Positions 192-31,056 of a stretch of DNA of 64,000 nt are shown one piece after another. How positions within the stretch are numbered: position 1 is the first letter of the stretch; every line of letters starts with the position of its first letter. Both the position numbers and the translations under genes were made by a program. The notes beneath the pieces were generated by a model. It was not told where the DNA came from. It saw only the letters and a list, made by a program, of their open reading frames with translations, and made no database searches. The stretch is from Ophelia neglecta (lineage: Eukaryota): positions 66,278,001-66,342,000 of the forward strand of contig OZ260663.1 of assembly GCA_965285935.1 (NCBI GenBank), written 5' to 3'.

Positions 192-3100
192 CTGAAGTTA
201 AAAAACAATTCAAACATTTTTTGTTACTGCTATTAAATTTATGTAGTAGGTAGCAGCGCAATGGCCGGTCTTATACTTTCTGCACCTCCTGATTGTTCCG
301 ACACACGTTTGCAATAAAAAAAATTTAAAACATTAGCGTTTATGCTTAATGGTACGAACATGATAGTGTAATGCCCAACGTACCTCCACAATCAAATATG
401 GTTCGATACAACGCCATATTGTTGCCTTCATTCACCTCAGTCACTGAGTTTCTGCAGTCGATTAAAACCCCAATATAAGGATGGGTCCAGCAGTATTTGG
501 CCGTGTCTTTTGTTAGTGGTATAATCAAATTGGAACCATTAAGTTGGATAACAACCGTAACTGCAGCCGGCAGTGGTTGCTGGAAAACCGACATTTGTTT
601 CAAGTAAATAACCTAGTGAAAACGCAGTTTAACTTTTACTGCACACTATGGCACGGGAACAGTAAGCGTACATTAACCTAAACTATCCGGTAATGCTTCG
701 AACGCAGTTAGATGTGACAGAATATTGCCCAAATTTATACTTCTTTGCACGTATCATTATACAATGTACATTGCCATACTGCGGTCTTAATTAATAAACT
801 ATCACGACATTCATTCGTTTCAATAATCATGTACCTCACCTGCAGCAAAAGCAGTTGTTGATTATCGTAATTTCCAGCTGGAAACAAAGCATCTATTCCG
901 GGATTGTAAAACTCATCTTCGGATATGAAAAAACAGAAATCGAAATGAACATCAGTTCCACTCTGACTGGGAAAGAAGTACCCCCCAGTGACCGTAGCAG
1001 CCACTTCCAAGACAAAATTAGTGGCGGTTGCAGGAACGATGATGTCTAGGTCTAAGTTAGTGATCTCAAACTTCAGTACTGTCAGATCAGTCATACCTGT
1101 AAAACAAAATATCGTAAATTCGACATCTCTTTCAGCTGATCGTTACTGAACGCCTGGGAGTTGTTAACATATAAGAGGCTTACTTGTACAGTGTAAACTG
1201 TCAAAGTTAAGATCCGACGCAACTGCATTGTTGTTTTGTTCATTAGACTCAACAACATCGTTCAATGGGTCAAATTCAGCAATCATCGATATCCTCCCAT
1301 CGAAGTTACAGAGAAACAAAAAGTCTTCAGGTGTTATGGAAATATTTCCCGAAGCTGCAATTAAAATAAACCGTGTGCGGGTGCACATGCTATATCTCAT
1401 AATGAAATATGTAGATAATGCAAGACGGAAGGATTAATTGTGTGTTTAGAAATACCGTATGCTGTTAGTACCTGTAATTGCGCAAGGACTATTGCAAGGA
1501 GATGAAACATCGACGGACAGAAGACTGCCTACGGGCACCTTCAACGGTCCAGCCGCCAATGAAACCTCATATAGATACGAATGGGCGCCTAAAAGAAAAA
1601 GCAAGTTAATACCCGACAGACAAGGCAACAACTTTAAACAATAATTGTCCATTAAATCAGTCCAAAAACATCCGAACAACTGCCACAGGATCACACGCAT
1701 TAATACATGAATCGCCAGTGGCAAAACAATAATCAACTTATAATTAAACTAATATAAAAAAAACATATAAAATTAATATTACTAGTAGAAAATCGAATAT
1801 TTTTCTATGAATTTCGATAACAAAGCGTGAATTTGATGCTTATTTGTCATGTTTGTGCTATTTCGCAACTATGGGTTCAATGTTAGTAAAGCATACCAGA
1901 ATCCTCAAGCAAATGCCCATTCACGCTGAAGTCTACAGTTCCAAATTCAAGTGTATTACCAGACAAAACGGTCAACTCGTTAGCTTCTAAGTCATTGTTA
2001 TCTGGACGTATGAAGATAAAACTTGTCTAAACAGTTCACCAAGAGCATGAAGTCATAGTCTTTTGTCAAGAATAGTGTCAATTGTATAGCTGGACAACTC
2101 GGAACAAAACAGTGTTACGACTGAATCAACCTAAACGAACTTGGAACTTAACAAGCGTTTCCTTACTTTTTAACATATGTCATTGAAAAATAAACTCACT
2201 TCCCAAGCAGTGTATGCTTATCTCCGTAATAAATATGTTATTATCGATGATGAGTTCTGTTACATTAGCCAGACTAGGGTGGTTAGCCTTTCTTATTTTT
2301 AATATTAAATCAGCTTTGTCGGGACCCAATGGCAGTGGCTGAAGATATGCATCACATGCACTAACAAGGTGAACAACTCCTGACAACCTGTTTGAAGTGG
2401 ACGAAAATAAATCAACATATTTGTGTCGTTGTCATTTGTTAAACGCAGGAAAAACAATGAAAGCTATGTGCTCCCTTTTCTGTGCTTACCCGTGGATGCG
2501 AATTTTTTCATTTGCTAATATGGTGTTTCTTAATGTATCATCTTCTCCCAAAGCAAACGACCATTCTGCAGGAGTCACATCGTGCTCTAAATGCATTCCC
2601 TTTCTTCGCACAAACAACTGTCCAGAAACACAGCAGATATACATAACAGTGAATATGTATTACACATAGCAATCTGATGAATCGTGATTATACATAGTTG
2701 GTTGTACCTTTATTTCGAACATGTTGTGTATGCCATCAGAAATCAGATCATCACCGAAGACATTCTCGACATCAAATGATAAAAGAATTGGGCCAGGGTT
2801 ATATTCATATGTCGTGGTAGAAACGTCCACGTCATTCAGTTGGAATACGTCTGCCAAAACCAAATTGAATACATGTATGTGTTTATTTTGCGATTTGGCT
2901 AATTGTGAATATATAACGGGGAATAAGGTCATGTTTACAAATAAAACACTTGTGTAACCCTACCATATTTGCATTGAACCGTAACAGGGATTGCATATCC
3001 ATTGTTGTATTCTGACAATTCTTCCACGCTGTTCATGTCATCAATAACCGCTAACAGGAACACAAGTCCACAAAAATCAGGTGCAACATATGCCGGTATA

Positions 3101-6100
3101 GTCAATTTTTCGACTAGTGAATATAACGTACGTTCTATCACAGTGTTCGTTATATCCGTAAGATCAAGGGCACTAAGCTGATCGTTTCCAGAAAATTCCA
3201 GACTTAAATCCATGGAATCAAACATAGCATTTTTTGATAGATAGAATTGAACGGTAAATGCACTGAGCTGAGCTTTTCCTGCCATTGTAATGGAAACCAC
3301 AAATGAGAAATGATGTTGCGATCCAATCGCCAGTGTTATACTGGTTGGGGACAAAATTAATTTTTTAGCAGAAAAGTCAACGAAATCAATGCTGCATTTA
3401 ATTATGTTTGATACATCCTGATAACGGATGTTATTCTCGTAGATCTTCTCCTTCGTAATAATATGTACACCTTTGTGTATTTCCATAAGCATATATTTAA
3501 GAGTACATGCACTGAGAGGGAGGCGGATTTTCATCCAACCTACGACATCAATTTTTTGTCCTACTTCGGCAGGACCCAACAAAGCCTTTGAAATGCTGTC
3601 TGATATATCAAAAATTGTGATCCTAGTGTCGAGGTCCAGGTCTAGTTTGTTGTCATCTGACAAATACACACATATGAAGAAATTACGTCTTCCATCTGCT
3701 GAGGCTGGTATGTTTTCTCCAAAATTCCAAAATGAGAAATGAACTTCAATTTCTACTTCGACGTCGCTGTAGATAATCGTAACTGGGTCCTTTGGAGCCA
3801 CCATTAAATCAGAAACTGCGAGGAAGTCTCCGTCACAAATCATTAGGTATTGGAAGGCTCTTATGTTGTCCCTTGTATCCGGGTCAACGGAGGTGATGTT
3901 TTTTAGATCCTCTAATTCAACAATAAGATACACGTAGCCACAATAAAATGCTAGGTCCGGATTGTCGGCAACATCTATTCTAAGATTTGCACCATTTATT
4001 GTTATTTCATACGGAGAAGATTGAGAAATACTGATTCCTCTCCTAAGTATAAATTTCTGTTCGGCACTTAACACTATAGGGATCATAGAGTCGTCGGGAG
4101 TTCGGGAGTTATCCAGACTGAGGTACAATTTGAACATCATGCTGTAATCACCAAGATCGGATGGAGATGCCGCAGGGATTGAACCTAGATCGGGTGATAC
4201 CTAACAGTTTAATATTTGGACTATCCCTTAAATGTTAAATCGACTACCTAAGCGCTTGCTAATTATAAATTTCTCATCTACAATGTGTTTGTTCTATGGA
4301 CCTACCACTTGATGTTTTTGTCATCCCTATCTTTAGTTGAAAGTCCACCCACTGATCCGCCTTCAGGTCGGTGGTTGCAGTGCCTTCGTCCTCCAGTCTG
4401 AAGCTACTGACGAACAGGTTTACTTGTTCTAGAACAGATTGGTTACATTTGTACCAAACAGACAGCAATGATTAAGTGATTGTATGAAACGAAAGTTTCA
4501 GCTTGGCAGGTTATATAACATAACTTTCGTTCTATATGGATGTTATCTATATTTACCTTCTTGACAGCGGATTCGATCTTTCAGTGAGAACGAGGCAATG
4601 TCGTTATCTATATATTGGGAGTTCAGTGGCTCGACGGGGACCAAAATGATGAACAATGTTGGCGTATGGCTCATTGCCTGGTTACACACATCCATTGAGG
4701 AAATGTCTATTACTCCTATTAAATATCATTCGATGAAATGTTATTAAATGCGGTTTCTTTGAAGCATTACATACTTTGTCAAGACTTTTTGTGTTTTGTT
4801 TACATAACGGTTAGATATGGGATAGAAAATTGTTTTAAGGGTAAATTCGAACCGGTTAATAGAGGTGTTTGAACTGTCTGTCTGGCTGGAACTTCATCAG
4901 TGAATACAAAGGGCGTTCCATCCATTTTGACAACTGCAGCGCTGTCACTTGCATCTAAATGGTCATCAACAGAGAAGGCAACCTTCATTTCGAAAAGTCC
5001 TGCTGGGATACTTGGAAATCTCTTGCCACCAACATTTACCACAGATGCTATAAAACTTAGTGTTATGGGCATCATTGGCCAAAATGTCTCCGGTTCAGAC
5101 ATTATTGTCACGTCTTGTAGCGCTAGTAAATCATCTAAAAAGAAAATTTTAAAAGTTTTATTATGGATTTGATCATAAAGTCATACCATAAGAAAAAAGC
5201 TTCCTATGTGGCATGAAATCCAATAAGGTTTTAGTATTATATGAATATATTAACCAGGGCAGCTAATGTGTATGAGTCTTTCCAGAGCATTGTTTTGTTC
5301 ATATATGTCAAATCCGGTGATGTAATCAGCCATTATCTCCACTAGCCTGAAACATAATAGCAAATGTTTATCATTCTAAGACGAATCTATCCAAAACAGT
5401 ACATGTGTAAGTCGAATGCACAATATGAAATATTTAAATCAAAATGGTAGAAATGACATTATTTTACCATATTTTGTCACAATATTTTACGCCCTTTGGA
5501 ATAGAGACAACATAGCCAACTATATATTCTTGGAAGACTGCTTCTCCCACGCCCGTGCCAGTAAGACCTTCCACTGGATTTATATTTAACCAGGCCAGTT
5601 CCATGTGAAAATCTGTAGGAAATACAAACAGCACAGATAAGTTGACTATTATGCAAAATTTGAAAATAAGATATAAAGAGCGAAAGTGTTTGCCCATGCC
5701 TTTGGTGTTATTTACGTGGCAGTTAGCCTATGTGACCGCGGATAGATACTTATTGACACAGAATGGATAGCATCATATCATCATGTCAAACATTAATCAT
5801 TTCATTTTGTTTTTATTGACTCTTTCTGGTACTAATGTCCATAAACTTTGACTCTTGCAAGTCATTTTTGATCCCGTTCCCATTAACTGGGTCTGATTTT
5901 AATTCTTAATGACTGATACCTCATATTAAGAGTGCTGTACTAGTTTGTGTTCGTTGTCTCAGTTTTCCGATTCAAACATTGTCACAAAATGGCAACCCAA
6001 AAAATAGGTCAACACTGTCTAAACCTTTAGTGTGACCTTCTAACTCAATTTGATAGCCTTCATCTGATTGTTTTCACTTACATGGTAAACCAAAATCAAG

Positions 6101-9100
6101 GTTGTGAAAATCGCTTAATATGTGGCTTTGTTTGGAAAAAGGTAGAATTTCCTAAAATAAAATGTATTACATCTATACCAGACGAGTCTTATTTCGTTAA
6201 ACAGCTATGAAATACAGGATTTGATCGAATATGTTAGCAAATAATCATGTTTTATAATTACCTTCCTCTGAAGTACCAAACTTGACATGTATCTGTATGT
6301 TATCGGGAAAGAGTGGTGTAGACAAAACAACAGTCCCAATAACAACTGCTTCAATAATAAAAGACACATTCAGGGTATCCCCTGACAACACTGTATCCGG
6401 AAGAGTCTCATCTACCAACCTAATGTCAACCCCATTGATGTCTACATAAAATGTTAAAGTAGTAGCACGAATAAGAATAAACATTAACCAGTCAATCGTA
6501 TTTAAGTCGCATTTTAACTTTCTACTTTCGCCTAATCGGTATGAATTTTATAACATCAATTTACCTGAACAACCTGTGACAACACCAGTCACAGCTGCAA
6601 CATTGTTGCTCTCGTCAACTTCAACCAGTTTTTGGAACCAGTTTACATAAACTGATACCGACACATTTTTATTACAGTGCTTTATCAGTTGATTCCGGTC
6701 AAACACCATATTGGGATCCGATAGTTCTATGTCAAGTCCGTTTATTGGCATTTCAACCAACTTAACTGCCTGAGATGCAGGTAGGTTATAAGTAATATCA
6801 CAGCCTTTGTCTGGAGGTGCAGCATCTATAAATGCATTGACACTACATTTTATAACTCAAATAGAATATTTAATCAATTTTAATCATAAATGATTATAAA
6901 CCAAACAAGAAATATAAATGCTTATCTAATAGAGTGTATGCAACCATAGATAGCATTGAGACGAACAAGTATTAACTATTATTTTACGACATTGGATATG
7001 AGTTTAGGCACCCGATATAAAGAACGCCAGGCCAAATTTCGGTAGATTCTTCGGATAAGTTGGCCACACTGATCCTGCCCAGCTGATATTCATGTTCATG
7101 GGCAGCGTAGGAGTTTTGGATGCGTTGAAAATAATTCCGGAATCCTTGGCATCCAAAAGGAACGATCTAATTAGCAGATCCACGTGAACTGTCGAATTGT
7201 TAATCAGATAAGATACAGACTATGTTAATTCCTTAACATAAAACATCATTTTACAATAACTTGCAATAATTCATTTATTTCCACTGTTGCCTTGCACGCA
7301 ATGCCGAGACCAGGCTCGTGTGAGTTTGTTTGAAAGATGTTTAATGTTTCTTAATCTTCTCAACTTACAATCAGGGCATTTAAGTTTGAATGCTACAATG
7401 CGCACGTTATTATCAGTGATGGTCCAGTTTAGTGATTCTGCTTGTTGGCTGTCTCCTTTTACCATTTCTAATCCCATGTAGGCGATCTTAGCACAATCGT
7501 TTGATCCGTCCACAGCAAAGTGCCCTGATATATTTATTTGCACTTTGTTGTCTGTAAGAGCATTATAAAACAGGAAATCATTTTAGGAAACTGTATGATA
7601 TTATATATTTGAATATCCTATGTTATATTAGGGCAATGCTCAGGTTGCTACATCAGTATAAAAAACGGGAGTGGATACATACTTTGCGAAAATACACTTA
7701 TATGGTAGGTATGTTTCTGACCTGAAGCTACGGAGAAATCTGTTTGTAAAGCATCTGCAGGGGCTATAAATGTGTTATCATCGTAGTCGCCCAAAACTTC
7801 AGAAGTCCAAAATGCGTCAATTTCTGATGGATTAACGGTTCCAATTTCTTGTTGGTCTTTGGTAAAAGTCTTAAATAGAATAAGAACATTATCTTAACCA
7901 TCAGCACTATATCTTAATAATTCTTAATTAGTCAACTCATTTGTCAAAACCTCAATAAAACAAACCTTTATTTTGAAGTAAAAGTGCACCGGTAAAGAAA
8001 TGGAGCCGTGTGATGCTACAATAGGGCAAGAATCGGCAATGCACGTTACTTCTGCAGCGAACTTTATCAGCGCGGTCTCTCCGGATTGTATCCCGGCGGA
8101 AGGTAATATGATCTCCAAAGAAGATATCTCAAATGCGTCTGCCAATGAACAAATCGTATTTTATCATTCACAATTGAAATAAACATGTATTATTAATATG
8201 TCGCTATTGTGTTTTAACGCATGGTGCCATGAAAAGTATTTCATTAAAAGGCAGATTGTAATGTTTACCGTCTTGGCAGACAACATAGACAGGAGTGGCG
8301 TGAACATTGTTCACTTCATTTGTTTCTTTTATTATATTTGTTGAGTCCAGTTGTACAATGACGTATGTGTGTCCACAGAACCGTTGCTTCAAATTGTTTG
8401 GAATGTCCAGCGTCTCAGTTATTGTGCCACCAATTCCCAGGATTACCATGGAAACATCATGAGGGATAATGATGTCCAACTCATCGATTTCTTCATCAAC
8501 TGACAGCCAAAGCAAGAACTCAGAGGAATCTAGGAATAGATTTATCAAAATAATATTAATCAACTCATGCATGTCTCGATGAGATAAGTGTTCCTTAATT
8601 TAAACAAAACTGTGGAATGACATATGCGATCAAGGTATCTGTTTAATTTTAACAATCTATTATAAACGTTAATAGAACGTGCCTATGACTTCAGACGTAA
8701 CGACAGTTACGTCCAAGGTAAAGTCTGTACTTGCACCAAGATTCAATGGTCCAGCAAAGAAAAAGTCACCAACTAACATATCTGTGCTTTCTGAAATAAT
8801 TAAAAAGCATATCATCTAAACGGTGAAAGTGTACATCATCTTTCCAGGAATAAAAAGCATCTGCTTGATTTATTAGGATATTTTGTAATAGAGTTTCTCA
8901 TTATCAGTACATATACGTTATCATTTCATATACTCGCACATATAATTTATATAGTTTCCAGATAAGCTCCTCAATTGTCTTTTAGGTATATTGTTACAAA
9001 AATACCATGCTATGATACACATAACACGTTACTAAACATGTTTACCATGCTATGATACACATAACACGTTACGAAACATGTTTTCCATACCTGTACAAAT

Positions 9101-18100: not shown

Positions 18101-21100
18101 GTGGAAGTGACTGATGTAATACAATTAAGGAGTTTTCATCATAAGGCATCAATAAGGAATGTACCTTGAAAGCAAAGTTATCATCTTCAGTCGACGCAAG
18201 AATTGTGATAGGCTCCACATTGTACACCTGGGCGGAAAATGACACAGAAAGCGGAACCCCCTCTCCGATAAGCGTCCCCATCTCAGATTGAAAATTAACG
18301 TGGAAAACATCTACAATAGCCAAATAAAATTGGCAGGTTACTTTTCATTTATAAAGCGATATACACGTTTAGTTAACGATGATTAGACAACATAGTAATT
18401 ATATTGCTATCACCTTTGACACATTTAATAAGTGTCATTTCCTCAGCAAGATTATTGTTCTCATTGGTTTCAATAACAATGTTGCCAGGATCAACAACCA
18501 CAAGCAGATAAATCACACCACACAAATGTTTCCATGTTGTTTCCGTTAATGTCTGAAAGGAAAAGCAGGAGGTAAAGTACGTTATGAAAAATAAAGATAT
18601 CTAAAGATATTTGTTACTTTTCTATTTACGTCTATTTACCACTGTGATTGTTGCAGTCCATACGATGCCGTCCCCAACAGCAGCCTTGGAAGAGGTGTCC
18701 ACCGTGTGAAAACTTGGCAGGTCGAAACTTTCATTAAACATTGAGTCTCTGGAGGCATAAAACTGCAACCCTGGCTCTTCCATGGCATCTATGTCGGATT
18801 CTACCGAATACTATACAGCAATAAAAACGAGTCCAAGTTAACTAAATATGCACCTGTGGTTGCCAACTGTTTTATTGAGTTAAAATTGCTATTATATAAT
18901 GAATTAATGTTTGGTTTAGCTTTTAAGAGTTTGCTGGTTTTTAAAAATAATCGAACTTAACCTCCACTTTTAAATTGTATTCAATTTCCATATCTGTTCC
19001 GGACATTACATACGAGTTGAAGCTGAACTCATTCACATTCAAATCTCTTGGTTCTGAAATACATTTAAGTACAGAAAATTAATCACTTTCTGAAAACTCA
19101 AAAAACTCAAAGTCAAGTATTCGTTTTGAATATGAATTTTATAGCATACCGCTACATGCAACATTGATAATTCTTATTTTGTCGTTCATCTTGTAGGAAT
19201 CCACCATCCCCATAGTAATTCCAGCTCCTATATCCACCTCTAAAAACCACTCTCTGCGAAGTAAAAGTCAATGGAATGTCTTATAAAATGGAAACCTTTA
19301 TTCAACGAAATACTTCAATAATTACTGAACCTCAAGGATACATAAGCGAACTATCATATTGTGGTCTTAGTTATTGTGTATATCATTCATATTTTCCTCT
19401 TTGATGTGCTTACTGAGAGTTAATCTTTCCACAAGCCGTTGGTCCAACAGGTAAAATGACCTTCACTCCACTAAAGGTCGTCTTCTCCCCTGCTCGGAGA
19501 CCATCGGTAATCTTCGGAAGGTCCCCGTCCGAAAACAAAAAGTTAGTCAGGGGCAACTCCGTATTATCATCAAGGACTATCTGCAGTAATGCAAATCAGT
19601 GGGTAAGCAAGTCAACCTTAAGGAATGATTTTATTATTATGGTACTAGTATCAACAGCTGGCAGTTTTTATTAGAAAATTACTATTATTATAGCTTTGTT
19701 AATGTCAGTCAGTCTGCCATAGAGTGTTAATTTTCAATTCATGCATACAACCTTTTGGTTTCAAATCGCACGGAATGTAAAATTGAACCTACTCTGAAGT
19801 CAAAAAAGGAAGCTCCATTGTGTGACTTTGGGATGTCGTAGCCCTCGGGGTGTGAGTTGATTAGCGTCACAGAGAATTCCAACTCCGCTTCCTCTATTTG
19901 TATTATATTGGTAGTCGAAATTGTTAAGTCACTGAGCTCAAATAAATCTAAATAAAGAAAGTTTAGCTTTAATTCGGTGAGGAATGCGGTCTTTGAATAT
20001 TAGCATTGCATTGTCTGTGTTGATATTTAAAATGCTAAATATGCTTGATATTCATTTACAATGAAAAAATCGATATAAGAGTGTTAACAATCAAAAGTTA
20101 ACTTTAATTTACCCGTTGGACATTTGATAAGAATCCTCTTCATGACGTAGTTGTTGTCAGGGATAGGGTCTTTCGTATGGTAAGATCGTAATTTTTCGAT
20201 AATATTTGTTGTAGCCTCTGAGATACGTATAGAAGGAAATATTAAGGATGTTATGTAAAGTGGAGCAAGGAATACAAATATTTGACTAGGATACGTTGTA
20301 TATTTCTCTCTATATTATATCTATTATTACTTATTATTCGGGCACCAACGTTTTACTCAATGTCAAACATACTTTATATCTCGCCACAACGCACCTGGAG
20401 TTTTAAAATTGTTCAGGTCAAATAGAACTACCACCAGATACACAGAACCGCATGATAACCCTCCCTCTGCACTTGTGATCAAAAGATCATTGGAATTGAA
20501 ACTGTATGCCACAGTCTCGTCGGATATCTCACTCCACATCTCAGATGAGTGGATTGGGTGTGTATATGCTGAAACGTACGCACATATACATCAAGTGGAT
20601 TATGAGCGAACAACGAATTTGAAAAAAACAGACGTGCCCAATTTCTGTTTTGTTACCGATTGAAGTTAACTGGCATGTGTCCTCAAGTGAACACAATATA
20701 CCATTCTTGACCGATTTGAACCAGACGCCACGCTTTACGCAAGATTTACAGGCATAATATTTAGCTGTATTTAATCATATGCAATAAGGATATGTCTAGT
20801 AATTAATTAGTTCTTCCATGGGCCATCAGGTGAAAATAAACTTGTTTTCGTTTAATCACCAGGACCAATTTACAATGTTGCCTGTTATATGGCATTGAAG
20901 AGACCCATAACATTATCATACTGGCTAATTATCATTCACAAACAAAGAAGAAAGTATCTGTCTTACAAAGCATTTGTTCATAGTTGATCCCATCCCTGGA
21001 GAGGAGGAATTTGTATCTATAGTTTTGGATCCCATCAGAGAAAGGAGTAATGTGGTCTGTCGTGCCTGCGTGGACCTTGGCGTTAAACTCATACTGAACA

Positions 21101-24100
21101 GTTTCGTCTAAACGAATGAAGTCGATTTCCTCAAGCGATGTATCCAGCAGTTTGAAATTTACGGCTTCTAATTCCACAAATGCTAATAATAGAATTGGTT
21201 TTATATAGATCCATTTTCTAAACATTCTATTCATTATACCAGATCACGTTTGTCTTGCAATGATATAAACTTGACGAAAATTACTAATTAAATGTCGGCA
21301 AATCTCAAAAGTTATTACATATTTCACACATAGAGCATTTAATTTTAAAAAAGGGCTTATCTCAGGTGCCGATATTGATAATTATAAAGAGATCCGCAAA
21401 TCGGAAGTTTCTTAATCGTTGCCATTGCGTTAGTCGCATTAGACCCTTATAGTCATACAACAAGTGAGATTTTCTTACAGTCATTACAGACGAGTTTGAG
21501 TTTCTTTGGCTCAGCATTGGCGACTTGGGAATATGATGACGTTGAATAGCCGAGAGACTGCAGATGTGCTGAAGGACTTATAGAGATCACCACACTACGA
21601 CTGGAGCTGGAGGACAAAACACTGCACTCGGCAAGTGACAATGTCAGCTCACCTGAAATGTTTAAGGTCAAATCGTACAATGAACCCGCAGGACGAATGA
21701 CACTTTATACATATTATATGATAATGTTATAATAATGCTTTTATCTATTAATGAACACATTTAATGTATAAACTGCTACAGGAAGGATTTAGTGATAGGA
21801 TGTCACAGTAGATTCACCTGATCCGCTGATAAACACATGTTCTCCAGAGGGTATGGGCTGTCTTTTGATGCTTAAGTCGTACAAGCTGATGTTAAGGGCG
21901 TCAACTGAAGTTCCCATTCCATCATCCAAGAAAATGTGTACGTCAAAATTATCAGACCCATTCTGAAAGGCGTCTGCATACTTCCCCTGGAATAAATTCC
22001 ACATCAATGAAAAAAATGATGGCTTGTTTATTTGTAAGGCCACTACGCTTTGTTCTAGATGTTTATACAACGCTTCACAAAACTAAAGCTTTTCTTCTCG
22101 GATGCAAATAGGTCATTTGGATTAACAAACTTTACCTCATGGGTGACCTTGGCACTAAACTGTATTTTGTAAATGAAACCGGACCAGAATACGGTATCAA
22201 AGGAAAAGGTCAGTAGTTGAGGCTTCACTGAAAATGTATGACGGATTTTAGCAACCATATGGGGAGAAATGAAAATAATTTATTAAAATGAACAGGATCT
22301 TTAGACCAATAAAAGAAGTATTTTCTCAACATACAAGTTAGTTGGCAGACGAGGTTGATATCGATGGAGGCAGGTGTTCCAGGAGAGAAACCGGAGCCGG
22401 TCCTAACGTCTGCCGTCACAGCCAGCAGCCGAGGTTGTCCTTCGGCCAGTAGACCAATACAGGCATCTTTGGACAAGGCACTCGAGGGCAGCGTAGCTGG
22501 ATCGCAATCCAACATACATTTGATAACATAACTTATAATGGCGGAATGTCACTGGCAAATAGAGCAAATCGCCACGATGTTTAATAAGGACGTAGAATCG
22601 TAGTTGAAATAATTGCCGCTATAATGTTTTGTGACTGTAGGTGTTCATCGGCATTAAAGAACTTCTCCAAGATAATGGGAATCTATCTTAAATTTATTGA
22701 TGCCTTGAAATCGCCATTAAACCGAACTTCTTGAGTATCAATTTCTTATCCTGTTGTATTTCATGAAAAAGGTACCATATAGGCCCTATTGAAAATGTTA
22801 AATTACAGCATGAATAGACAAGAGATGTAAACACGCTTGTTTGTTAGTATACATAATTGCGTTATAATTATAGTGGTGCGAGCATATTAATGTCATACCG
22901 TATATCGCAATTGTCACAAGAGCTCCGCCATCTAGACCAGAGAACGTTTTCTGCGCATCACTTTCGTCTACTTCTACCGCGAGTTGAATATCACTAGGGT
23001 CGACTGTGTCATCTGCCGACATATACACCTCCAGGGCAAAATCCGGGTCTTCCGCACTGCCCCCTATCAGCGCGGACGTGTGGGCATTCATCACCTCTAT
23101 CTTTGGTTATCAAATAATATAAATTGTTTAGACCACCTTCAATCAAGATATTCGTGGTTTCAGTGCATGAGCATGTAAGATGTTTATGTGCTAAAATAAT
23201 ATTGATTAAAATGGATGACTGGGACTGCCAAGACAACGAACAGAATATGAAGTTTACCTGGAGGTGCATCACATACGTGGACTGAACATATATATTCGAT
23301 GGAACCCTTTCTTGGGTTCCACTCCCAAATCCTGACTTCACTATAAGGAAAAATGAGCAACGAATTGACAAAAGCAAGACTGTAATTTAATGTCTGCCTA
23401 GTGTAACATTTACACATTTACCATGTATCTTTGGCCATTTTATCCAGATCATCAACTATCAAATTTGTTAGGATCGTTAGAACCATGTGCACATTATATG
23501 TTAGTTATATTTATCTTTAAATGGAGAGAAATACACAAATCACAATTCTGCCATGTGTTATCCTATATGTCATGGTTAACTGTGCTTTTGTCAATAGTAA
23601 CGTGACGACGGCCCCAATTAAAAAACACACTGTGAGCAGCCCATGTGCTTCCCTGAACAATTTATATGGTATCGTCTCACGTGTTGGAGAAGGAGCAGGC
23701 GGGCAGTTCAATCCGATCACACTGGACGCCGGGATAGCTGAAGCAAGAACCGCAACATTGTTACTTTCGTCCACTTCTGGTATACGGTTGTCTCGGTCGA
23801 CTATAATACCAATGAACACATCCTCTCCACAGTAACGTTCGAACCCACTTGGAGGAAGGACGAGTCCGCCTGCAAAACCAAAGTCTTAATTTAATATTTA
23901 GCATATTCGCAAGTTCTACTTACATTGATGCCTATTGATCTCAATGCTTAGCTTGACATAAAATTATGTGATATCAGAGAAGATTTTATATTTCCTGGCC
24001 TGGTTCAACTGGCGTTATAAAACCACTTTCCCTCTAGTCATTTCATTACAATAATTGTGGCCCACAAATGATAATAAACCTGGTTCCTCTACAGAGATGT

Positions 24101-27100
24101 CCATCGTTTCTGTACTTGACGCGGGGACAGATCTGGCCAGTTCATTTCTCTGGCACTGTGTCAGGTACACCGCTATTTCCAAGTCAGTGTTAGGGTCAAT
24201 CTGATTATCATCAGTGATATAGAAATGGACTGAAGTGTGGGGCCATTCCTGATGGGGGAGTGACATATATCCTGTAGTCACGTCGATTGAAGCTGAGTAG
24301 CTTGAAGGTGTATCCACGATCAGTCCTGTGATACCGGTGAAAGCCCCAGCAGCTATGTCGATTGTACCTGAAATCCGCATCCAAACTATCTTAGTGAAAA
24401 ATGGATGTCGTCAAAACGATCGAGTGATTTATAAAATGGAAGTCGTCAAAGAGATCGAGTGATTTATAGGCACTGACACCAAAAATGTGGACTTTTAACT
24501 ACCATATTTTCTGCATCTCGATTGAAGGAGGTCATCTTAGATAAATAAAATATGAAAACTGTTATATATCTACCAGACAAAGAGCAGTCCATAACCACCT
24601 CCTGTGTCAACCAGTCATTGACAACAAAGTCGTCAGTTGGGTCCAACTCAAGTCGGACGTATCTTAAGTGGTCGTTGCATAATACCGCTTCCAGCTCTAC
24701 TTTAACTCTGAAGGACACAGTTGCGGATGCCACGCTGCAGACAAAAACCAGCTATTCTGTACATTTATATAACAAGAACAAACTGTAACTATGAACCAAT
24801 TTTATTAAGCAAACTAAGCAATGGAAAGTTGATAAACCTGATATCTTCTTGAGTTCCTTGACCACCGTCAATCGCCTCAAACGCACCAATCACATTTAAT
24901 TGTACTTCATCTCCGTCTCTTGTTCTGTTCGTGTCCATTAAAACTATGAAGCCAAAGTTGTTGTTTCCCGCCGTTTTACCACTGCAGTCTGCCGCAGTAC
25001 AGGAAACTCGGGCAATGAAAGTAAAAGTCACATCGGATCCAGCCATCCATACTGGTTCAGGCGATAAGAGTTGGAAATCATTCAAAGCCATCGCATCTAA
25101 ACACAATGAACACTAGAATAAACCTGACGTGCAATGTGTTTATCTATAGTTTTGGTGTGCCAGTCAACCTGATTTAAAGTGTTTCTAACATTTATTGAAA
25201 TAATCATAGAATAAATTGTACTATCAACAGTGAAGGACTAGATACAATCACCAATTTTGGATTACATCGATATATGTAAATAATATGCTAGGATGCATGC
25301 CTTGATTTAAAGTTTTATTTCCTAACTTATATATTGAGGGGCAATGTTAACGTATGATCTTTAGGTTAAGATATACACCGTTGTTGTGGCAGGCAAGAAT
25401 AACTTGGTCCATAGCAATGTTGTTATATTCGTATAATTCCTCTATGACATCGTTGCTGTCAATGAAGAGGATTGCGTACACATGTCCGCACAAGGACGAG
25501 TTGGATGGGATGGGTATAGGCGTGCTGGACATAGTCATGGATCCATCTACATCTATCGTAATAGTCACTCCTGAAAATTAATCAAAATTAGTCGCCAGCA
25601 CGATAAAGTAAAACTAGATGACAAATCAGCCAGATGACTACCATTACTAATGTATTTACTTAATATGAATGTCACGTGGCATTTTTAATTGACACTATGA
25701 GGGCAAAGAATTTAAGAAGAACTTGAATATTAAGTTAAATACCAGAATCTATATCCTTTTCGTCGTAGATATTGTTGTCAGACCACAATAAGCTTGTCGT
25801 GAAAGATGCAGGGTCGACAGAGCCCACTGTCACCGTCCCTCCGAGAGTCACAGTTGGCACCGTAACTCCGTCTGCGATGAGCCGGTTTTCGGAGACAGTA
25901 AAGCCACTTACACTCAGATCGTTGACTGAATTTAGATAATAAGAAGATGTACAATTATAAAGTCTCTATTTTCAGTAAAAACTAACCTTAATCAGGGGGT
26001 TAAATTTGTACCTTATATATTTCTTTGCCTAAAAAGTCATTATTTATTCCATCATATAAGTGGCTCTGGTTAGGATTGGAAGAAATTTATTGCGCATGTA
26101 AATTGAAACAATAAGCAACGTCACAATGATGCATTACATAGCCGATCCTTCAGGTGGTTGGGATTTAGGCATTAAATAAGTGTGATAAATTAATTTTCGT
26201 CAACACGAAGAGTTACAAATAAATTTCTTTATTTAGCCTATGCACTTGGTTGATATTTTAATATATATTGGTATCCCTATCTTCTAATTTAAATTTAAAA
26301 AAAAATGATTAACCTGGTGCAGTGTCCGCAACCGTCACTTTAACAGCTACGTAGTTATTATGGAATATTTCATCAACCTCATCTGCCGCTGGCGCCACCT
26401 TAAGTATAATGTGAGTGAAACCAACATTGGAGGTGAAAATGTCGTCTGGAACATGGATGCTGACGTCATGCAGTTCAACACTTGCCCCTGGAGGAATCGC
26501 TGACATTGGGCTGTCCCTTGAGGCTGTATAATCTACCTCTCCTACACGTGTCAGCTCTAGACTTTCACCTGAAAAATAAATATGCCTTTGGAATGATCAT
26601 AATCTGGAACTTGGCTTAACTCAGAAAGGGGTGTCGAAACAAATTCAGCTGAATGAAAGGCAACGTGAATAGTTTCCCTGCAGAAAAAACCAATACGCTG
26701 ATAAGATTACAACTGATTAACAATCCGAATTTATGAAATAAAGTGAAAGGAAGAAAAGGTACGTTCGGAAATGAGGTTAACTATAGGTTCACTGACCTTG
26801 ACCCAACTGTGGAGAGTCACTAAGATAAAGGATGAGGCGGAATGCTGCCTGCCCTCCTTTATATGTCTGGTTATGCATATTGAAAACAATTGCGTTGACG
26901 GTGAAGTCAAAAGACGTATTTGGGTACACGATTGGCTTGAAAGGTCCCAGATATATAGTCATGTCAGAAATTGACCATTTGTCTACGAAAAGAGCAATAG
27001 AGAGTTAGAAGTGTTAATAAAATCAACCTTTTATGCTAGTTTCTTTCAATTCGTTTAAGAGAAAATACCCAAAAGTTGATACCTCGAATAAGTATACATT

Positions 27101-29039
27101 AAGTTATATACCTGTTGGACATATAACAGTCACTGGAATAATCAATTGGTTATTCCATTCATTGCGTTCAGGTATTTCCCCAAAACCTGAAAAGGATTAC
27201 TCAATTGAATTTAACAGGTTTATGATTCGATCAAAGTATTAAAATTGCTTATATAACTTGAAGTATATTTATATTAAAGTGCGTGTACCAGTTCCGTGAT
27301 CAATGCTGACTCCAAGATAGACTCGTCCACAGTAAAGGTGTGTCATGAGATGGCTGTGTACGTCCGGGATACCGAGATCTGAACCCCCAAGGTAGACACT
27401 CCCGGATGAAGAAAAACGTTGGTTCAAGTTTGAAAATGACCTCGGCAATTTGGTTACCTAAAATGTTAATATTATTGTCCAGTACATATGCATTCACAAA
27501 ATATATAATTATGTAGGTCACCTTCACAGTCACCAAGTTGTGCATGTTTGATAAATAGCAATTGCTCTATGCTGAAATACAAAATAAGTTCTTAAATTAC
27601 AATATTCACCTCAAGGTCAAAAGAGGGTTCGATGACGTCATCAATGCTCAGGAACAATTTGACTTTGTATGTCTGGGTGAAGAGATCAGGATCAGGATCA
27701 AGGACGAAAGAGCCAATGATGTCTACCCTCAAGGCAAGGATGAGATGGGATGACTCCCCAGAGTAAAGGACCTGGTCCATGATGTGGAACTGGAGTATGC
27801 TCAAATCAACGTGATCTAGATTGAAAAAAAGTGTATGCTATCGTCTGCTTTAGGGCAATAACACTTTGTTTTGTTTTGTGGAAAATGGGATAAGATACTC
27901 AGCAAACAATTCCAGTCATTAAATAGGGATATAACCAGTATATCGGCTACACATAATGTCAGAAGTCAGATGTCGTTTAGATATATGCATATAATTACAA
28001 TGTTTGGCGTTCAGATTAATTTGGCCAGCAACTCCTTCTTTTATTATTAGAAGTGAAATAACTAATACTCACTGCTTGTACATTCCAAGAGGTCGGAGAT
28101 ATACTGACAATGATAATTATTCTCATTATCAATTTCATTGTAGGCGGCGTATATTCCTTTCGTCACATGGACACAAACATATTTCAGATTTGCACAATTA
28201 GCTGCTGAAACTTTTACATTAGAGTGACCCTCGATAGTCAAAGTCTCGGACGATTCTGAGGCCAAACCTACGAGAGAAAAAAACGATATATGAATAATCA
28301 TGTATAAAAATGAGAATAGTACAAAATAAAGAAAACATTTAAAGATCTAATTTCCCAATAAATGATATGCCTCTCGTCAATAGTATGTCAAACGTGAATC
28401 ATGTTTCGACTTTAATTTTCTTCGTTCATAAATGGTCAAGTACAATACTGTTTGTACGTATAACACATTGGTTTACTGCTTAGATGTAATCAAATTTTTG
28501 ACGTTAATATTATGACCTTTAAGTAGAAGGTCACTCATGCCACTCTTTTTGAATGACATCCAAGCGTCTGCGATTCCGAGACTATCAACTTCTCCTGCCG
28601 AGGAGAGGTCAACGTCTGTCAGCTGCAGTGTGACCTCATAGTTATCGAAGTCCCCGGCACTGGCCAAAACGTCATTTCCGGAAGGCGCTGTGTTCACAAA
28701 TGACACTCTGCATGAAACGGCCGTGTTAACATCTTGGTACAGTTTCGCTCCTGATAGTTGCAAACTGAATCCTGTCACTTGAAGGTCTGAAAGAAATGAC
28801 AATTTTTAAATCACCGTGATTACAAATATTGTTCCAAAATGTTTATAAAAGCTTTGTTGAAGACAAACTATTATCATGGTACTCCTTTGTTGCTGACGGA
28901 ATTAAAAGGCAATTTATATGAATCATGTGCTGATAAAAAGCCAGTCGAGTGTCAACTGTTCTACATTTCTACCTGGTTGGCCGTAGGATCTCTCCCAGAG
29001 TAGCAGAATTATAAACGACACTAACTGCGATGTCATCAT
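36..29039 (-). CDS. Gene A: giant secreted or cell-surface protein with signal peptide, 33 tandem CARDB-like Cys-stabilised beta-sandwich domains and a Ca-binding EGF domain; 77 coding exons in window, >=4878 aa, 3' end beyond the left edge
   Basis: Manual splice tracing gives an open frame with consistent phases (sum 14635 nt). Exons 5'->3': 29039-28973, 28786-28517, 28267-28073, 27815-27610, 27457-27289, 27186-27112, 26982-26797, 26568-26314, 25925-25743, 25570-25379, 25096-24838, 24734-24574, 24367-24080, 23869-23681, 23340-23258, 23100-22899, 22496-22335, 22227-22136, 21986-21818, 21652-21479, 21182-20967, 20568-20395, 20217-20113, 19947-19793, 19580-19414, 19253-19150, 19053-18962, 18810-18640, 18552-18414, 18310-18165, 17980-17846, 17752-17584, 17452-17327, 17215-17057, 16957-16559, 16450-16268, 16092-15775, 15502-15368, 15245-14988, 14826-14620, 14365-14181, 14088-13923, 13722-13651, 13293-13142, 12713-12509, 12382-12305, 12215-12018, 11849-11670, 11500-11190, 10835-10700, 10485-10198, 10105-9974, 9855-9637, 9294-9091, 8790-8683, 8529-8269, 8138-7966, 7869-7722, 7551-7369, 7188-7012, 6825-6565, 6441-6262, 5612-5468, 5346-5255, 5134-4853, 4715-4557, 4428-4306, 4184-2964, 2850-2708, 2617-2490, 2387-2200, 2001-1897, 1588-1472, 1354-1184, 1096-840, 579(or 612)-384, 191-36. 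Recurrent motifs include CGHVYAILFIDSNDVIEELYEYNN, CGVIYLLVVVDPGNIVIETNENNN and CGLVFLLAVIDDMNSVEELSEYNN. The CARDB (PF07705) resemblance is by eye, not by HMM. Confidence 0.88.
2964..4184 (-). CDS. Gene A exon 68: 1221-nt exon encoding most of domains 28-30
   Basis: Matches the 401-aa ORF 2935..4140. Donor is G|GTAGGG at 2963. The phase-1 acceptor ctag at 4185 is required by the upstream donor; a second TAG at 4201 is out of phase. Confidence 0.85.
9003..9082. repeat. Intronic 40-bp tandem duplication (2 copies)
   Basis: TACCATGCTATGATACACATAACACGTTAC(T/G)AAACATGTT twice with one mismatch, just inside the donor at 9090. Confidence 0.9.
11111..11152. repeat. Interrupted (TA)n microsatellite
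   Basis: Two TA runs separated by TTTT, in a gene A intron. Confidence 0.9.
24398..24467. repeat. Intronic 35-bp tandem duplication (2 copies)
   Basis: AAAATGGATGTCGTCAAAACGATCGAGTGATTTAT followed by AAAATGGAAGTCGTCAAAGAGATCGAGTGATTTAT. Confidence 0.85.
28973..29039 (-). CDS. Gene A exon 1: signal peptide
   Basis: Translates MMTSQLVSFIILLLWERSYGQP: hydrophobic core and a plausible SYG|Q cleavage site. The phase-1 donor G|GTAGAA joins in frame to (D)LQVTGFSLQLSGAKLYQD. Too short for the ORF track. Confidence 0.85.
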
Positions 29040-30980: not shown

Positions 30981-31056
30981 ATGGATAAAATGATGCGATC
31001 TACAATTATATTAATTCTGATGAGCATGAACTTGGATATAACAGCTGCCACTGAAG
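30981..31056 (+). CDS. Gene B exon 1: signal peptide
   Basis: Translates MDKMMRSTIILILMSMNLDITAATE. The phase-1 donor G|GTGCGT joins in frame to VDVVLSGFEYRLSGAKLYQD through a TAGCAG tandem acceptor. Confidence 0.8.

What the first reader, a model, noticed from the sequence alone, without database searches (positions are those of the whole stretch)
384..28786. A typically prokaryotic adhesion domain (CARDB-like) built into an intron-rich animal gene
Seen: alpha-type repeats start with DLxV and contain FYLSxDxxLDxxD (e.g. LFLSNDSVLDPLD in A; FYLSKNDKLDVDTD in B) and YLxVxxDxxNxVxExxExNN. Established: this resembles the signature of CARDB (PF07705) repeats of bacterial and archaeal surface proteins. 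Here nearly every copy has a Cys pair (CG..Y and a C-terminal C), most boundaries carry phase-1 introns, and the array is fused to a metazoan EGF module. Inference: ancient horizontal acquisition followed by intron gain and tandem amplification, or an unrecognised eukaryotic branch of the fold.
Basis: partly seen in the sequence, partly recalled or inferred. Interest (0 to 1): 0.75.

Follow-up and report, generated by a model that had tools for sequence, protein, structure and literature searches.

The report
CARDB-type domain array in animal gene
A real, intron-rich animal gene for a giant membrane protein builds its outer stalk from about thirty copies of a domain otherwise known from bacterial and archaeal surface proteins, in an old animal-specific version whose origin by gene transfer is plausible but not shown.

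Summary
On the minus strand, 388-28787 encodes a tandem array of ~140-aa repeats (39 pieces at i-E<0.01, none on the wrong strand). It follows a signal-peptide exon and precedes an EGF exon. A diverged paralogue lies head-to-head on the plus strand.

Four lines support homology to CARDB:
- Pfam hits.
- An animal-only profile retrieves bacterial CARDB arrays.
- Language-model features point to CARDB clusters.
- A single-domain model ranks the solved CARDB structures first with two aligners.

The Cys pair is present in 31 of 31 pieces that cover it. The best donor is phase 1 at 28 of 29 domain ends.

The horizontal-transfer reading is not shown:
- Array domains sit on one side of a weakly supported branch and do not nest among prokaryote-type domains.
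- Relatives in amphioxus and the annelid Owenia (the latter colinear with gene A) make any transfer ancient.
- No donor was found.

This is a new animal variant of a known domain family. I found no paper on it. This scan has also noted the same locus under other titles. Expression is unchecked because no RNA runs exist.

The parts
28973..29039 (-). Gene A first coding exon: ATG, then a hydrophobic signal-peptide-like stretch, ending at a phase-1 GT donor
   Evidence: read from the sequence; no signal-peptide predictor was run
28614..28787 (-). repeat piece, model 1-57
   Evidence: i-E 0.0018
28077..28256 (-). repeat piece, model 85-142
   Evidence: i-E 3.7e-07
27601..27807 (-). repeat piece, model 1-70
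   Evidence: i-E 3.5e-05
27287..27436 (-). repeat piece, model 77-120
   Evidence: i-E 6.6e-05
26804..26977 (-). repeat piece, model 2-61
   Evidence: i-E 0.0015
26330..26548 (-). repeat piece, model 65-139
   Evidence: i-E 7.3e-06
25747..25920 (-). repeat piece, model 1-67
   Evidence: i-E 0.00011
25386..25547 (-). repeat piece, model 87-142
   Evidence: i-E 4.2e-10
24888..25085 (-). repeat piece, model 4-71
   Evidence: i-E 6e-05
24087..24314 (-). repeat piece, model 20-95
   Evidence: i-E 3.8e-08
23748..23867 (-). repeat piece, model 96-134
   Evidence: i-E 3.3e-05; Pfam CARDB 14.2 bits
22924..23100 (-). repeat piece, model 29-87
   Evidence: i-E 1.7e-07
20989..21144 (-). repeat piece, model 6-59
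   Evidence: i-E 8.4e-06
18436..18537 (-). repeat piece, model 101-136
   Evidence: i-E 2.4e-07; Pfam CARDB 25.2 bits, above the 22.7 cut-off
18162..18302 (-). repeat piece, model 6-53
   Evidence: i-E 0.0049
17594..17743 (-). repeat piece, model 96-141
   Evidence: i-E 0.0094
16800..16970 (-). repeat piece, model 90-141; the next repeat follows in the same exon with no intron
   Evidence: i-E 0.00029; Pfam CARDB 23.6 bits
16278..16403 (-). repeat piece, model 101-142
   Evidence: i-E 6.8e-06
15764..16090 (-). repeat piece, model 2-111
   Evidence: i-E 3.9e-07
15067..15246 (-). repeat piece, model 1-63
   Evidence: i-E 1e-05
14624..14815 (-). repeat piece, model 83-142
   Evidence: i-E 0.00054
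14175..14309 (-). repeat piece, model 20-69; holds LFLSNDSVLD
   Evidence: i-E 1.1e-05
13921..14043 (-). repeat piece, model 81-118
   Evidence: i-E 0.00029
13139..13288 (-). repeat piece, model 2-53
   Evidence: i-E 5.9e-06
11734..11856 (-). repeat piece, model 81-120
   Evidence: i-E 8.7e-06
10205..10474 (-). repeat piece, model 1-94
   Evidence: i-E 5.8e-10
9978..10091 (-). repeat piece, model 103-142
   Evidence: i-E 1.3e-06
9638..9850 (-). repeat piece, model 2-74
   Evidence: i-E 5e-08
9092..9304 (-). repeat piece, model 72-142
   Evidence: i-E 1.5e-07
8273..8518 (-). repeat piece, model 51-142
   Evidence: i-E 4.5e-14; Pfam CARDB 21.6 bits
7373..7546 (-). repeat piece, model 87-142
   Evidence: i-E 0.005
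6566..6799 (-). repeat piece, model 67-142
   Evidence: i-E 0.0028
4872..5126 (-). repeat piece, model 2-90
   Evidence: i-E 1.2e-06
3832..4179 (-). repeat, model 39-142; first of three copies in the single 1263-base exon 2938-4200
   Evidence: i-E 3.4e-17
3391..3822 (-). complete repeat in one exon, model 2-142; the divergent type without the E..E.NN motif
   Evidence: i-E 1.7e-33; structure model
2968..3378 (-). complete repeat in one exon, model 1-142; the canonical type; folded alone
   Evidence: i-E 3.3e-26; Pfam CARDB 19.4 bits
2204..2314 (-). repeat piece, model 109-142
   Evidence: i-E 0.0019
831..1088 (-). last repeat, N-terminal piece, model 1-84
   Evidence: i-E 2.2e-08
388..591 (-). 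last repeat, C-terminal piece, model 78-141
   Evidence: i-E 1.6e-09; Pfam CARDB 14.4 bits
40..177 (-). first EGF module after the array (inside the open piece 13-270)
   Evidence: cEGF 25.3 and EGF_3 20.8 bits, both below cut-off; aligns to the EGF region of the Owenia protein
29040..30980 (.). about 1.9 kb between the two start codons; presumed divergent promoter region (inferred)
30981..31056 (+). Gene B first coding exon: ATG, hydrophobic stretch, phase-1 donor
31281..63552 (+). Gene B repeat array, colinear paralogue of gene A; runs on beyond the window
   Evidence: 38 pieces at i-E<0.01

Best explanation
Shown:
- Window 388-28787 (minus strand) is the ectodomain-coding part of a real animal gene, gene A.
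- It encodes a signal-peptide-like start and then a head-to-tail array of ~140-residue beta-sandwich domains. At least 24 domain C-termini are detected, and the spacing suggests about 30 domains.
- These domains are homologous to prokaryotic CARDB (Pfam PF07705, E-set Ig-like fold).
- They are an animal-specific version. They are about 40 residues longer than the bacterial unit. They carry two conserved Cys, one just before strand F and one just after strand G.
- They keep the CARDB hallmarks FYLSxDxxLDxxD and DxxNxVxExxExNN in the canonical copies. A second, more divergent copy type has lost the acidic motif.
- Most domain boundaries carry phase-1 introns.
- After the array come EGF, TSP1, a weak NIDO-like stretch, VWD, many more EGF modules, one hydrophobic membrane-spanning segment and a tail.
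- A diverged paralogue, gene B, starts about 1.9 kb away on the other strand with the same domain order.

Inferred:
- The two Cys form a disulfide that clamps the F-G hairpin carrying the acidic loop.
- The array forms a long, stiff, probably metal-stabilised stalk. It holds a cell-surface adhesion or barrier protein far out from the membrane.
- The membrane-near part works like that of membrane-tethered mucins of the MUC4 type.
- The domain probably came from prokaryotes long ago, at or before the common ancestor of the animals that share it. It was then multiplied and diversified before the A/B duplication.
For: Array and strand specificity.

Pfam CARDB:
- 7 of 10 gene-A pieces match at E<=1, 2 of them over the cut-off.
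- 5 of 10 gene-B pieces match at E<=0.1, 1 over the cut-off.
- 0 of 10 opposite-strand controls match.
- Whole-protein scores of full-length relatives are 89.4, 44.3, 35.2 and 26.2 bits against a 22.7 cut-off.

Reciprocal search: a profile of three animal sequences finds 528 proteins at E<=1e-3. After the animal-type ones come proteins with 10 to 25 Pfam CARDB stretches, two of them with T9SS sorting tails, at E 1e-46 to 1e-38.

Alignment: motif-by-motif correspondence is visible.

Language-model features: 22 of 30 nearest clusters are pure CARDB. Three further sets, of 3, 3 and 1 hits, also carry it.

Fold: the single-domain model has pLDDT 83.6.
- Foldseek ranks 1-3 are the CARDB domain of PF1109 (2kl6, 3idu), best E 5.6e-6.
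- VIA-align ranks 1-2 of 48,161 chains are 3idu_A (Z 9.6, rmsd 3.2, 106 aligned) and 2l0d (Z 8.6).

Cys pair:
- 31 of 31 window pieces have it.
- 87 of 89 domains in 25 animal-type proteins have it.
- 0 domains in 7 prokaryote-type proteins have it.

Intron phases.

Downstream modules: TSP_1 37.2 bits, EGF_CA 63.4 bits, and VWD at 17.6, 18.6 and 22.6 bits. The hydrophobic segment lies in L002 2880-3122.

Age:
- A and B are colinear at 25-59% identity over the matched pieces.
- The Owenia protein is colinear with gene A, and P0006 with genes A and B.
- The three-domain exon is an open frame in at least 12 other clusters.
Against: - There is no RNA evidence. No listed run is RNA. Splice sites and the protein are inferred from frames, consensus sites and relatives.
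- Per-exon Pfam scores are weak. Only 3 of 20 pieces pass the cut-off.
- Foldseek TM-scores to CARDB are modest at 0.36-0.54, and NPC2/ML-type sandwiches follow closely. VIA Z values of 8-10 are only a little above the usual best chance level of 7-8 stated.
- The disulfide, metal binding and stalk function are not tested.
- NIDO is weak (E 0.11 in each paralogue). AMOP was not detected even at E<=5. The MUC4-like reading of the membrane-near part therefore rests mainly on VWD, EGF, the hydrophobic segment and my recollection of that layout.
- Origin from prokaryotes is not shown by any tree here.
Confidence: 0.75

Rival explanations
1. Origin reading 1. A bacterial or archaeal CARDB-array gene, or a piece of one, entered an early animal genome. 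It then gained phase-1 introns, a disulfide and an insertion, was amplified, and was joined to EGF/TSP1/VWD modules.
For: - CARDB is abundant and diverse in prokaryotes. 5 of 14 control genomes have it, and most of the 528 hits are of the prokaryote type.
- The animal type is rare among named proteins. Only Branchiostoma and Owenia appear among the 30 clusters looked up.
- The same genome also carries canonical CARDB in a separate gene with RHS repeats, an architecture reported for bacteria (papers seen as passages). Its domains sit with the prokaryote-type rows. This shows such domains can reach or persist in this animal by a second route.
Against: - There is no nesting inside a prokaryote-type clade.
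- No donor was found. Of 64 pattern matches in one genome per species of bacteria and archaea, 0 were confirmed.
- The trees are unrooted and poorly resolved, with 35 of 57 inner branches open.
- Absence from other eukaryotes was not tested with labelled data.
Confidence: 0.4
2. Origin reading 2. This is an old eukaryotic or early-animal branch of the E-set fold, inherited vertically and lost in most lineages. Its likeness to CARDB would then reflect common ancestry far older than animals.
For: - Array domains form one side of a branch against all sampled prokaryote-type domains.
- The gene is deeply embedded: phase-1 modules, colinearity with the annelid protein and an amphioxus relative, and a paralogue pair.
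Against: - Sequence motifs are kept almost letter for letter with bacterial CARDB. That is unexpected after so long a separation unless constraint is very strong.
- None of the looked-up clusters is named as a unicellular eukaryote.
- The named distribution is patchy.
Confidence: 0.25
3. Function rival. The array is not a passive stalk. It is a binding surface for microbes or glycans, acting as an immune or symbiont-handling receptor, with the variable loops of the thirty distinct domains as recognition sites.
For: - Each domain is individually conserved between paralogues and species. This fits position-specific roles.
- The modules that follow (TSP1, VWD, EGF) also occur in invertebrate recognition proteins. 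This point is recalled, not tested.
Against: - No binding data exist.
- No lectin or known recognition domain was found by Pfam in the pieces scanned.
Confidence: 0.15
4. The resemblance is chance or convergence in a generic Ig-like repeat.
For: Ig-like sandwiches are common, and many unrelated ones score Z 6-8.
Against: Four independent lines point to the same family: Pfam, reciprocal profile, language-model features and two structure aligners. Shared motifs lie at the same strands.
Confidence: 0.03
5. Bacterial contamination of the assembly, or a very recent transfer.
For: None found.
Against: - The locus lies inside a 116-Mb contig.
- GC is 0.35-0.43, like the rest of the window.
- There are dozens of GT-AG introns.
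- It is fused to EGF/TSP1/VWD.
- Homologues exist in two other animal phyla.
Confidence: 0.01

Closest known systems
Pfam CARDB (PF07705), with solved examples PF1109 of Pyrococcus furiosus (PDB 3IDU, 2KL6) and MA_4588 of Methanosarcina acetivorans (2L0D)
   Same: - The fold is the same.
- The motifs FYLSxDxxLDxxD and DxxNxVxExxExNN lie at the same places.
- Both occur as long tandem arrays in surface proteins.
   Different: - The animal unit is ~140 residues, not ~100.
- It has a conserved Cys pair that is absent from the prokaryote-type proteins examined.
- It comes in two diverged types.
- It is encoded by phase-1 exon modules.
- It is fused to EGF/TSP1/VWD and a membrane anchor.
Uncharacterised proteins KAI8495792.1 and XP_078689460.1 (Branchiostoma) and CAH1772454.1 (Owenia fusiformis)
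   Same: - The same Cys-pair repeat type.
- Whole-protein CARDB scores over the cut-off.
- The Owenia protein is colinear with the 3' half of gene A and ends in EGF and TSP_1.
   Different: - Identity to the window is only 22-47%.
- Their records carry no functional name.
- The Owenia models are partial.
Membrane-tethered mucins and relatives with NIDO-AMOP-VWD-EGF-TM (MUC4, SUSD2). The layout is recalled from memory.
   Same: VWD followed by EGF modules and a single membrane-spanning segment, with a weak NIDO-like stretch upstream, in both paralogues.
   Different: - The outer part is a folded domain array, not a Ser/Thr-rich mucin region.
- AMOP is not detected.
- There are extra TSP1 modules and many more EGF modules.
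Teneurins, the accepted case of a bacterial surface-protein scaffold taken over by animals (bioRxiv 10.1101/2025.11.11.687626 and PMC6425310; passages only)
   Same: A prokaryotic extracellular module used in a large animal membrane adhesion protein. Those papers list CARDB among the N-terminal repeats of bacterial teneurin-like proteins.
   Different: Genes A and B have no YD shell. The transfer is not demonstrated here.

Membership tests
CARDB (Pfam PF07705) | Match to the Pfam profile at or above the gathering score of 22.7 bits | tested here: met
   - Exon by exon, 3 of 20 pieces are over the cut-off (23.6, 25.2 and 23.6 bits), and 12 of 20 match at the E thresholds used.
- Full-length relatives score 89.4, 44.3, 35.2 and 26.2 bits.
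- I did not score a joined model of gene A.
CARDB (Pfam PF07705) | Family signature motifs at equivalent positions (FYLSxD..LD..D; D..N.V.E..E.NN) | tested here: met
   Alignment of animal and bacterial domains to one model and motif counts. The divergent copy type lacks the acidic motif.
CARDB (Pfam PF07705) | Same fold as the solved CARDB domains | tested here: met
   - Foldseek ranks 1-3 are 2kl6 and 3idu (E 5.6e-6 to 3.5e-5, TM 0.36-0.54).
- VIA-align ranks 1-2 of 48,161 chains are 3idu_A (Z 9.6) and 2l0d (Z 8.6).
- That 2l0d is a CARDB domain is my recollection. Its entry title says only 'putative cell surface protein'.
CARDB (Pfam PF07705) | Reciprocal retrieval: a profile of the candidates finds accepted members | tested here: met
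   Profile A1 retrieves P0017-P0020 at E 1e-46 to 1e-38. These carry 10 to 25 Pfam CARDB stretches at 353-965 bits.
CARDB (Pfam PF07705) | Metal binding, as in 3IDU (title: 'in complex with di-metal ions') | not testable with these tools
   Only the conservation of the acidic residues is seen: E124, E127 and N130 are invariant in 13 sequences.
MUC4/SUSD2-type membrane-near module (NIDO-AMOP-VWD-EGF-TM) | NIDO domain | tested here: inconclusive
   PF06119 at E 0.11 and 12.9 bits (cut-off 25) in one exon of each paralogue.
MUC4/SUSD2-type membrane-near module (NIDO-AMOP-VWD-EGF-TM) | AMOP domain | tested here: not met
   No Pfam AMOP hit at E<=5 in the four exons between NIDO-like and VWD. The exons were scanned singly, so a split domain could be missed.
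MUC4/SUSD2-type membrane-near module (NIDO-AMOP-VWD-EGF-TM) | VWD domain followed by EGF and one transmembrane helix | tested here: inconclusive
   - VWD pieces score 17.6, 18.6 and 22.6 bits against a 22.9 cut-off.
- EGF_CA scores 63.4 bits.
- A hydrophobic 20-mer with Kyte-Doolittle mean 2.83 is followed by basic residues in L002 2880-3122.
EGF-like modules | Pfam EGF-family match next to the array | tested here: met
   The window exon 13-270 is below cut-off (cEGF 25.3/26.6; EGF_3 20.8/28.5). The downstream exon L004:288-719 gives EGF_CA 63.4 bits and FXa_inhibition 53.3 bits.

The most novel reading that the evidence does not exclude
A prokaryotic surface-array domain was taken up once by an early animal and became the building block of a so far undescribed class of giant membrane adhesion proteins. 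These have CARDB stalks on a mucin-4-like anchor. They are kept as a head-to-head pair of register-matched paralogues and survive only in a few marine phyla. This would be a second teneurin-like case of a bacterial extracellular scaffold being reused by animals.
Probability: 0.3. Interest if true: 0.7.

Novelty: new variant of a known kind. Interest (0 to 1): 0.5.

Why it matters
CARDB is treated as a bacterial and archaeal cell-surface domain, and its name says so. This locus shows an old, animal-specific version with three distinguishing features:
- It is stapled by a disulfide.
- It is packaged as phase-1 exon modules.
- It forms the bulk of ~500-kDa membrane proteins shared by at least an annelid, amphioxus and this animal. 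The size is estimated from about 30 domains of 140 residues.

This gives a concrete and testable case for how extracellular modules cross between prokaryotes and animals, or persist unseen in eukaryotes. It also names an uncharacterised family of very large surface proteins that can be studied in amphioxus and Owenia.

If the family turns out to be widespread in animals, the finding shrinks to an annotation gap.

Tried and rejected
- Whole three-domain model against PDB with Foldseek. It gave only generic multi-Ig matches such as integrin legs, so I folded one domain alone.
- phmmer of two repeats against PDB sequences: 0 hits at E<=10.
- The search for homologous proteins:
  - With the 421-aa exon it found only 2 fragments.
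  - With P0006 residues 2485-2887 it found only itself. The word index and length window make it blind here.
  - The third search used a 129-aa COX1 piece of the genome's mitochondrial contig to learn the phylum. The taxon of the window stays unknown.
- Cluster look-ups: 30 clusters were looked up and 7 carry a name.
- RNA evidence: 3 runs are listed, none on record as RNA, and all are kept as contigs from one study. I did not use read laying, because DNA contigs cannot show splicing or expression.
- AU test of 'all animal rows one clade' on the 155-row set: not finished after two 288-second runs. I replaced it with a 60-row set in which the rows were already one side of a branch.
  - That set dropped 68 of 102 prokaryote-type proteins (every third was kept).
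  - It also dropped 27 of 53 animal rows (only P0005, P0006 and the window were kept).
  - All trees use one domain per prokaryote-type protein.
  - 'Prokaryote-type' is my label: no Cys pair and a ~100-aa unit. Only P0018 is named bacterial, and P0019 and P0020 have T9SS tails.
- Scan of one genome per bacterial and archaeal species: alignment A2 had no usable conserved stretch. With A1 there were 64 pattern matches and 0 confirmed. The patterns came from the animal-specific divergent repeat, so this is a weak negative.
- Literature: four searches. The 'word start' hits were mostly 'cardboard' and NOD2 CARDb. PMC7720500 was a false hit (CARD with a footnote mark). I found no paper on animal CARDB arrays. 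Supplements were not consulted, and tables of domain censuses there could mention them.
- I rejected contamination, chance resemblance and recent tandem duplication for the reasons given under the rival explanations.

Full report
ANATOMY

The window holds two genes that start about 1.9 kb apart and run away from each other.

- Gene A (minus strand) begins with an ATG at 29039. A hydrophobic stretch follows, and the exon ends at a phase-1 GT donor at 28973.
- Gene B (plus strand) begins in the same way at 30981-31056.
- I built a profile of the repeat from the two complete single-exon copies in the window and from relatives found in public data. At i-E<0.01 it finds 39 pieces on the minus strand of 1-30000, 38 on the plus strand of 30001-64000, and none on the opposite strand of either half.
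- In gene A the first piece starts at 28787 and the last ends at 388.
- At least 24 pieces reach the C-terminal end of the model. From the spacing I estimate about 30 domains of ~140 residues.
Every search was made exon by exon or with stored proteins.

- The acidic motif [ED]x(1,2)[ED]xNN occurs 14 times on gene A's strand and 13 times on gene B's strand, and never on the wrong strands. The FYLSxD-type pattern is less clean, with 3 wrong-strand hits.
- Both quoted peptides are present.
- Both conserved Cys are present in 31 of 31 exon pieces that cover the two positions.
- At the 29 domain ends whose frame closes within 25 codons, the best donor is in phase 1 in 28 and in phase 2 in 1. All GT dinucleotides in the same intervals split 55:29:15 for phases 1, 2 and 0.
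- On the acceptor side, a pyrimidine-rich run and an AG straddling codon positions 3/1 precede the first Asp of the domain. The Asp codon is split G|AY. This is judged by eye.
- Three boundaries in gene A have no intron. Two of them lie inside the 1263-base exon 2938-4200, which holds nearly three domains.
- The exon after the array, 13-270, gives EGF-family hits just under Pfam's cut-offs. The exons beyond the window edge give EGF_CA at 63.4 bits.

IS IT CARDB?

Four lines agree.

1. Pfam.
   - CARDB is the top family in 7 of 10 gene-A pieces at E<=1, with 23.6 and 25.2 bits over the 22.7 cut-off.
   - It is also the top family in 5 of 10 gene-B pieces at E<=0.1, one of them over the cut-off.
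   - 0 of 10 opposite-strand open frames hit anything.
   - The matches lie mostly on the C-terminal third of the profile.
   - Full-length relatives pass clearly at 89.4, 44.3, 35.2 and 26.2 bits.
2. Reciprocal search.
   - A profile of three animal sequences was scored against 1.84 billion representatives. It finds 528 proteins at E<=1e-3, 128 at 1e-10 and 22 at 1e-30.
   - After about 16 animal-type hits come proteins with 10 to 25 Pfam CARDB stretches. Two of them also carry T9SS sorting tails.
   - The alignment shows the same motifs at the same places.
3. Language-model features. 22 of the 30 nearest clusters are pure CARDB clusters, and three more sets also carry it.
4. Fold.
   - One domain (2956-3390, minus strand) was folded with a 13-row alignment and gave pLDDT 83.6.
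   - Foldseek ranks the CARDB domain of PF1109 (2kl6, 3idu) first to third, with best E 5.6e-6 and TM 0.36-0.54.
   - VIA-align, run without Foldseek against 48,161 chains, ranks 3idu_A first (Z 9.6, rmsd 3.2, 106 aligned) and 2l0d second (Z 8.6).
   - These margins over the next unrelated sandwiches are small, so the fold line alone would be weak. Together with the other three lines it is convincing.

HOW THE ANIMAL VERSION DIFFERS

- The unit is about 140 residues instead of about 100.
  - 87 of 89 domains in 25 animal-type proteins have both.
  - None of the domains in 7 prokaryote-type proteins that align over both columns has both. Some of those have one.
  - F and G are neighbours in the model's strand order. 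I therefore infer a disulfide that clamps the hairpin carrying the acidic loop. This is not tested.
- Two copy types exist, one with the acidic motif and a divergent one without it. 24 of 53 animal rows form a starred clade (SH-aLRT 98) in the large tree.

THE REST OF THE GENE

I fetched flanking DNA from the same contig.

- After the array, gene A has the following modules:
  - EGF modules.
  - TSP_1 at 37.2 bits.
  - More EGF modules.
  - A weak NIDO-like exon (E 0.11, with the same result in gene B).
  - VWD in two pieces (17.6 and 18.6 bits; gene B gives 22.6 bits).
  - A long run of EGF_CA modules.
  - A second TSP1-like exon.
- Next comes a strongly hydrophobic 20-residue segment followed by basic residues, and then acidic tail exons.
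- AMOP was not detected.
- The layout recalls membrane-tethered mucins of the MUC4 type. That comparison is from memory and only partly met.

AGE AND ORIGIN

- Genes A and B are colinear: A descending pairs with B ascending. Identity is 25-59% over the matched pieces. 29 of 34 gene-A pieces match gene B better than anything else in gene A.
- The Owenia protein CAH1772454.1 is colinear with the 3' half of gene A through to the EGF exon. The unnamed 3469-aa protein P0006 is colinear with both genes.
- In the trees, window domains pair with their positional counterparts in those proteins.
- The array and its domain individuality are therefore older than the A/B duplication. They are also older than the split between this animal and an annelid.
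- Named relatives come only from Branchiostoma (two clusters) and Owenia (three fragments on one contig). 7 of 30 clusters looked up carry a name.
- The other animal-type clusters are unnamed open frames on contigs of up to 1.28 Mb.
- In this genome the A/B type occurs only at this locus. All 11 matches fall there, which is a lower bound.
- Domain trees:
  - With 155 rows and 117 columns, the animal label needs 2 changes against a shuffled mean of 44.
  - With 60 rows, the 26 array domains are one side of a branch against 34 prokaryote-type domains, with SH-aLRT 87, which is not starred.
  - Adding two domains of the other CARDB gene of this genome leaves this unchanged (SH-aLRT 83). It places those two with the prokaryote-type rows.
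- The trees are unrooted and mostly unresolved. They show no nesting in a bacterial clade and no donor. They do not exclude a transfer.
- A pattern scan of one genome per bacterial and archaeal species confirmed none of 64 pattern matches.

FUNCTION (INFERRED)

- A signal peptide, some thirty folded and probably disulfide- and metal-stabilised sandwiches in a row, adhesion-type modules and a single membrane anchor together describe a very long cell-surface or matrix protein.
- I think the array is a stiff stalk or spacer that presents or shields the surface. A rival reading is position-specific binding of microbes or glycans.
- Gene B's VWD exon carries GDPH where gene A has a different sequence. 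From memory, GDPH is an autocleavage site in mucin-type VWD domains, so the two paralogues may differ in processing.

NOVELTY

- In four full-text searches I found no paper on CARDB arrays in animals.
- The papers that mention CARDB concern archaea and bacteria. They include bacterial teneurin-like proteins (passages seen).
- Databases already attach PF07705 to at least one relative (precomputed list). The homology is therefore detectable by routine annotation, but it is undescribed.
- Two other first-stage notes of this scan cover the same locus. Their follow-up is withheld.

LIMITS

- There is no RNA run, so splicing and expression are inferred.
- The taxon of the window is unknown.
- The AU test on the large set was not finished.
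- Supplements of papers were not seen.

Noticed in passing
outside the window: L006 (G000:C7:55132001-55142000, + strand) and L007 (G000:C1:96625001-96635000, - strand): A second, unrelated kind of CARDB gene in the same genome.
- It has long open frames of 554-1013 aa and GC 0.45-0.46, against 0.38 in the window.
- It holds canonical full-length CARDB (99.5 bits, 4 stretches) followed by RHS/YD repeats (66.5 bits), after a Big_13-containing start.
- Its CARDB domains sit with the prokaryote-type rows in the tree.
- The layout recalls bacterial teneurin-like proteins, so it is a candidate for a separate and possibly younger acquisition.
   Followed up: partly
window 2938-4200 (-) versus 61400-63552 (+): Gene A encodes nearly three repeats in one 1263-base exon. 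This is also an uninterrupted open frame in at least 12 other clusters. Gene B splits the matching region into at least six pieces. Introns were therefore gained in B or lost in A.
   Followed up: partly
L003 9818-9991 (+) versus L004 4529-4924 (-): The VWD start of gene B carries GDPH and that of gene A does not. From memory, GDPH is an autocleavage site in mucin-type VWD domains.
   Followed up: no
window 29460-29648 (-): An open piece between the two genes, upstream of gene A's start codon, ends like the C-terminal end of the first repeat of both genes (..C..I..LL.C.G). It may be a relic exon or chance.
   Followed up: no
proteins P0005, P0086, P0048 (Owenia fusiformis CAH1772454.1, CAH1772455.1, CAH1772467.1): Three partial models of this family lie on the same 62-Mb contig, two of them with consecutive accession numbers. 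Owenia may keep a neighbouring pair as well.
   Followed up: no
L005 (G000:C223:3197-7537), COX1 at 1501-2841: Contig 223 carries a mitochondrial COX1 with 8 in-frame TGA codons. This fits a mitochondrial code that reads TGA as Trp.
   Followed up: partly
L007 9348-9998 (+): A reverse-transcriptase-like open frame lies next to the CARDB/RHS gene on contig 1. It was judged by eye and not scanned.
   Followed up: no
window 11085-11295: A TA-rich simple repeat, read as runs of YIYIYI in two frames, lies inside an intron of gene A.
   Followed up: no
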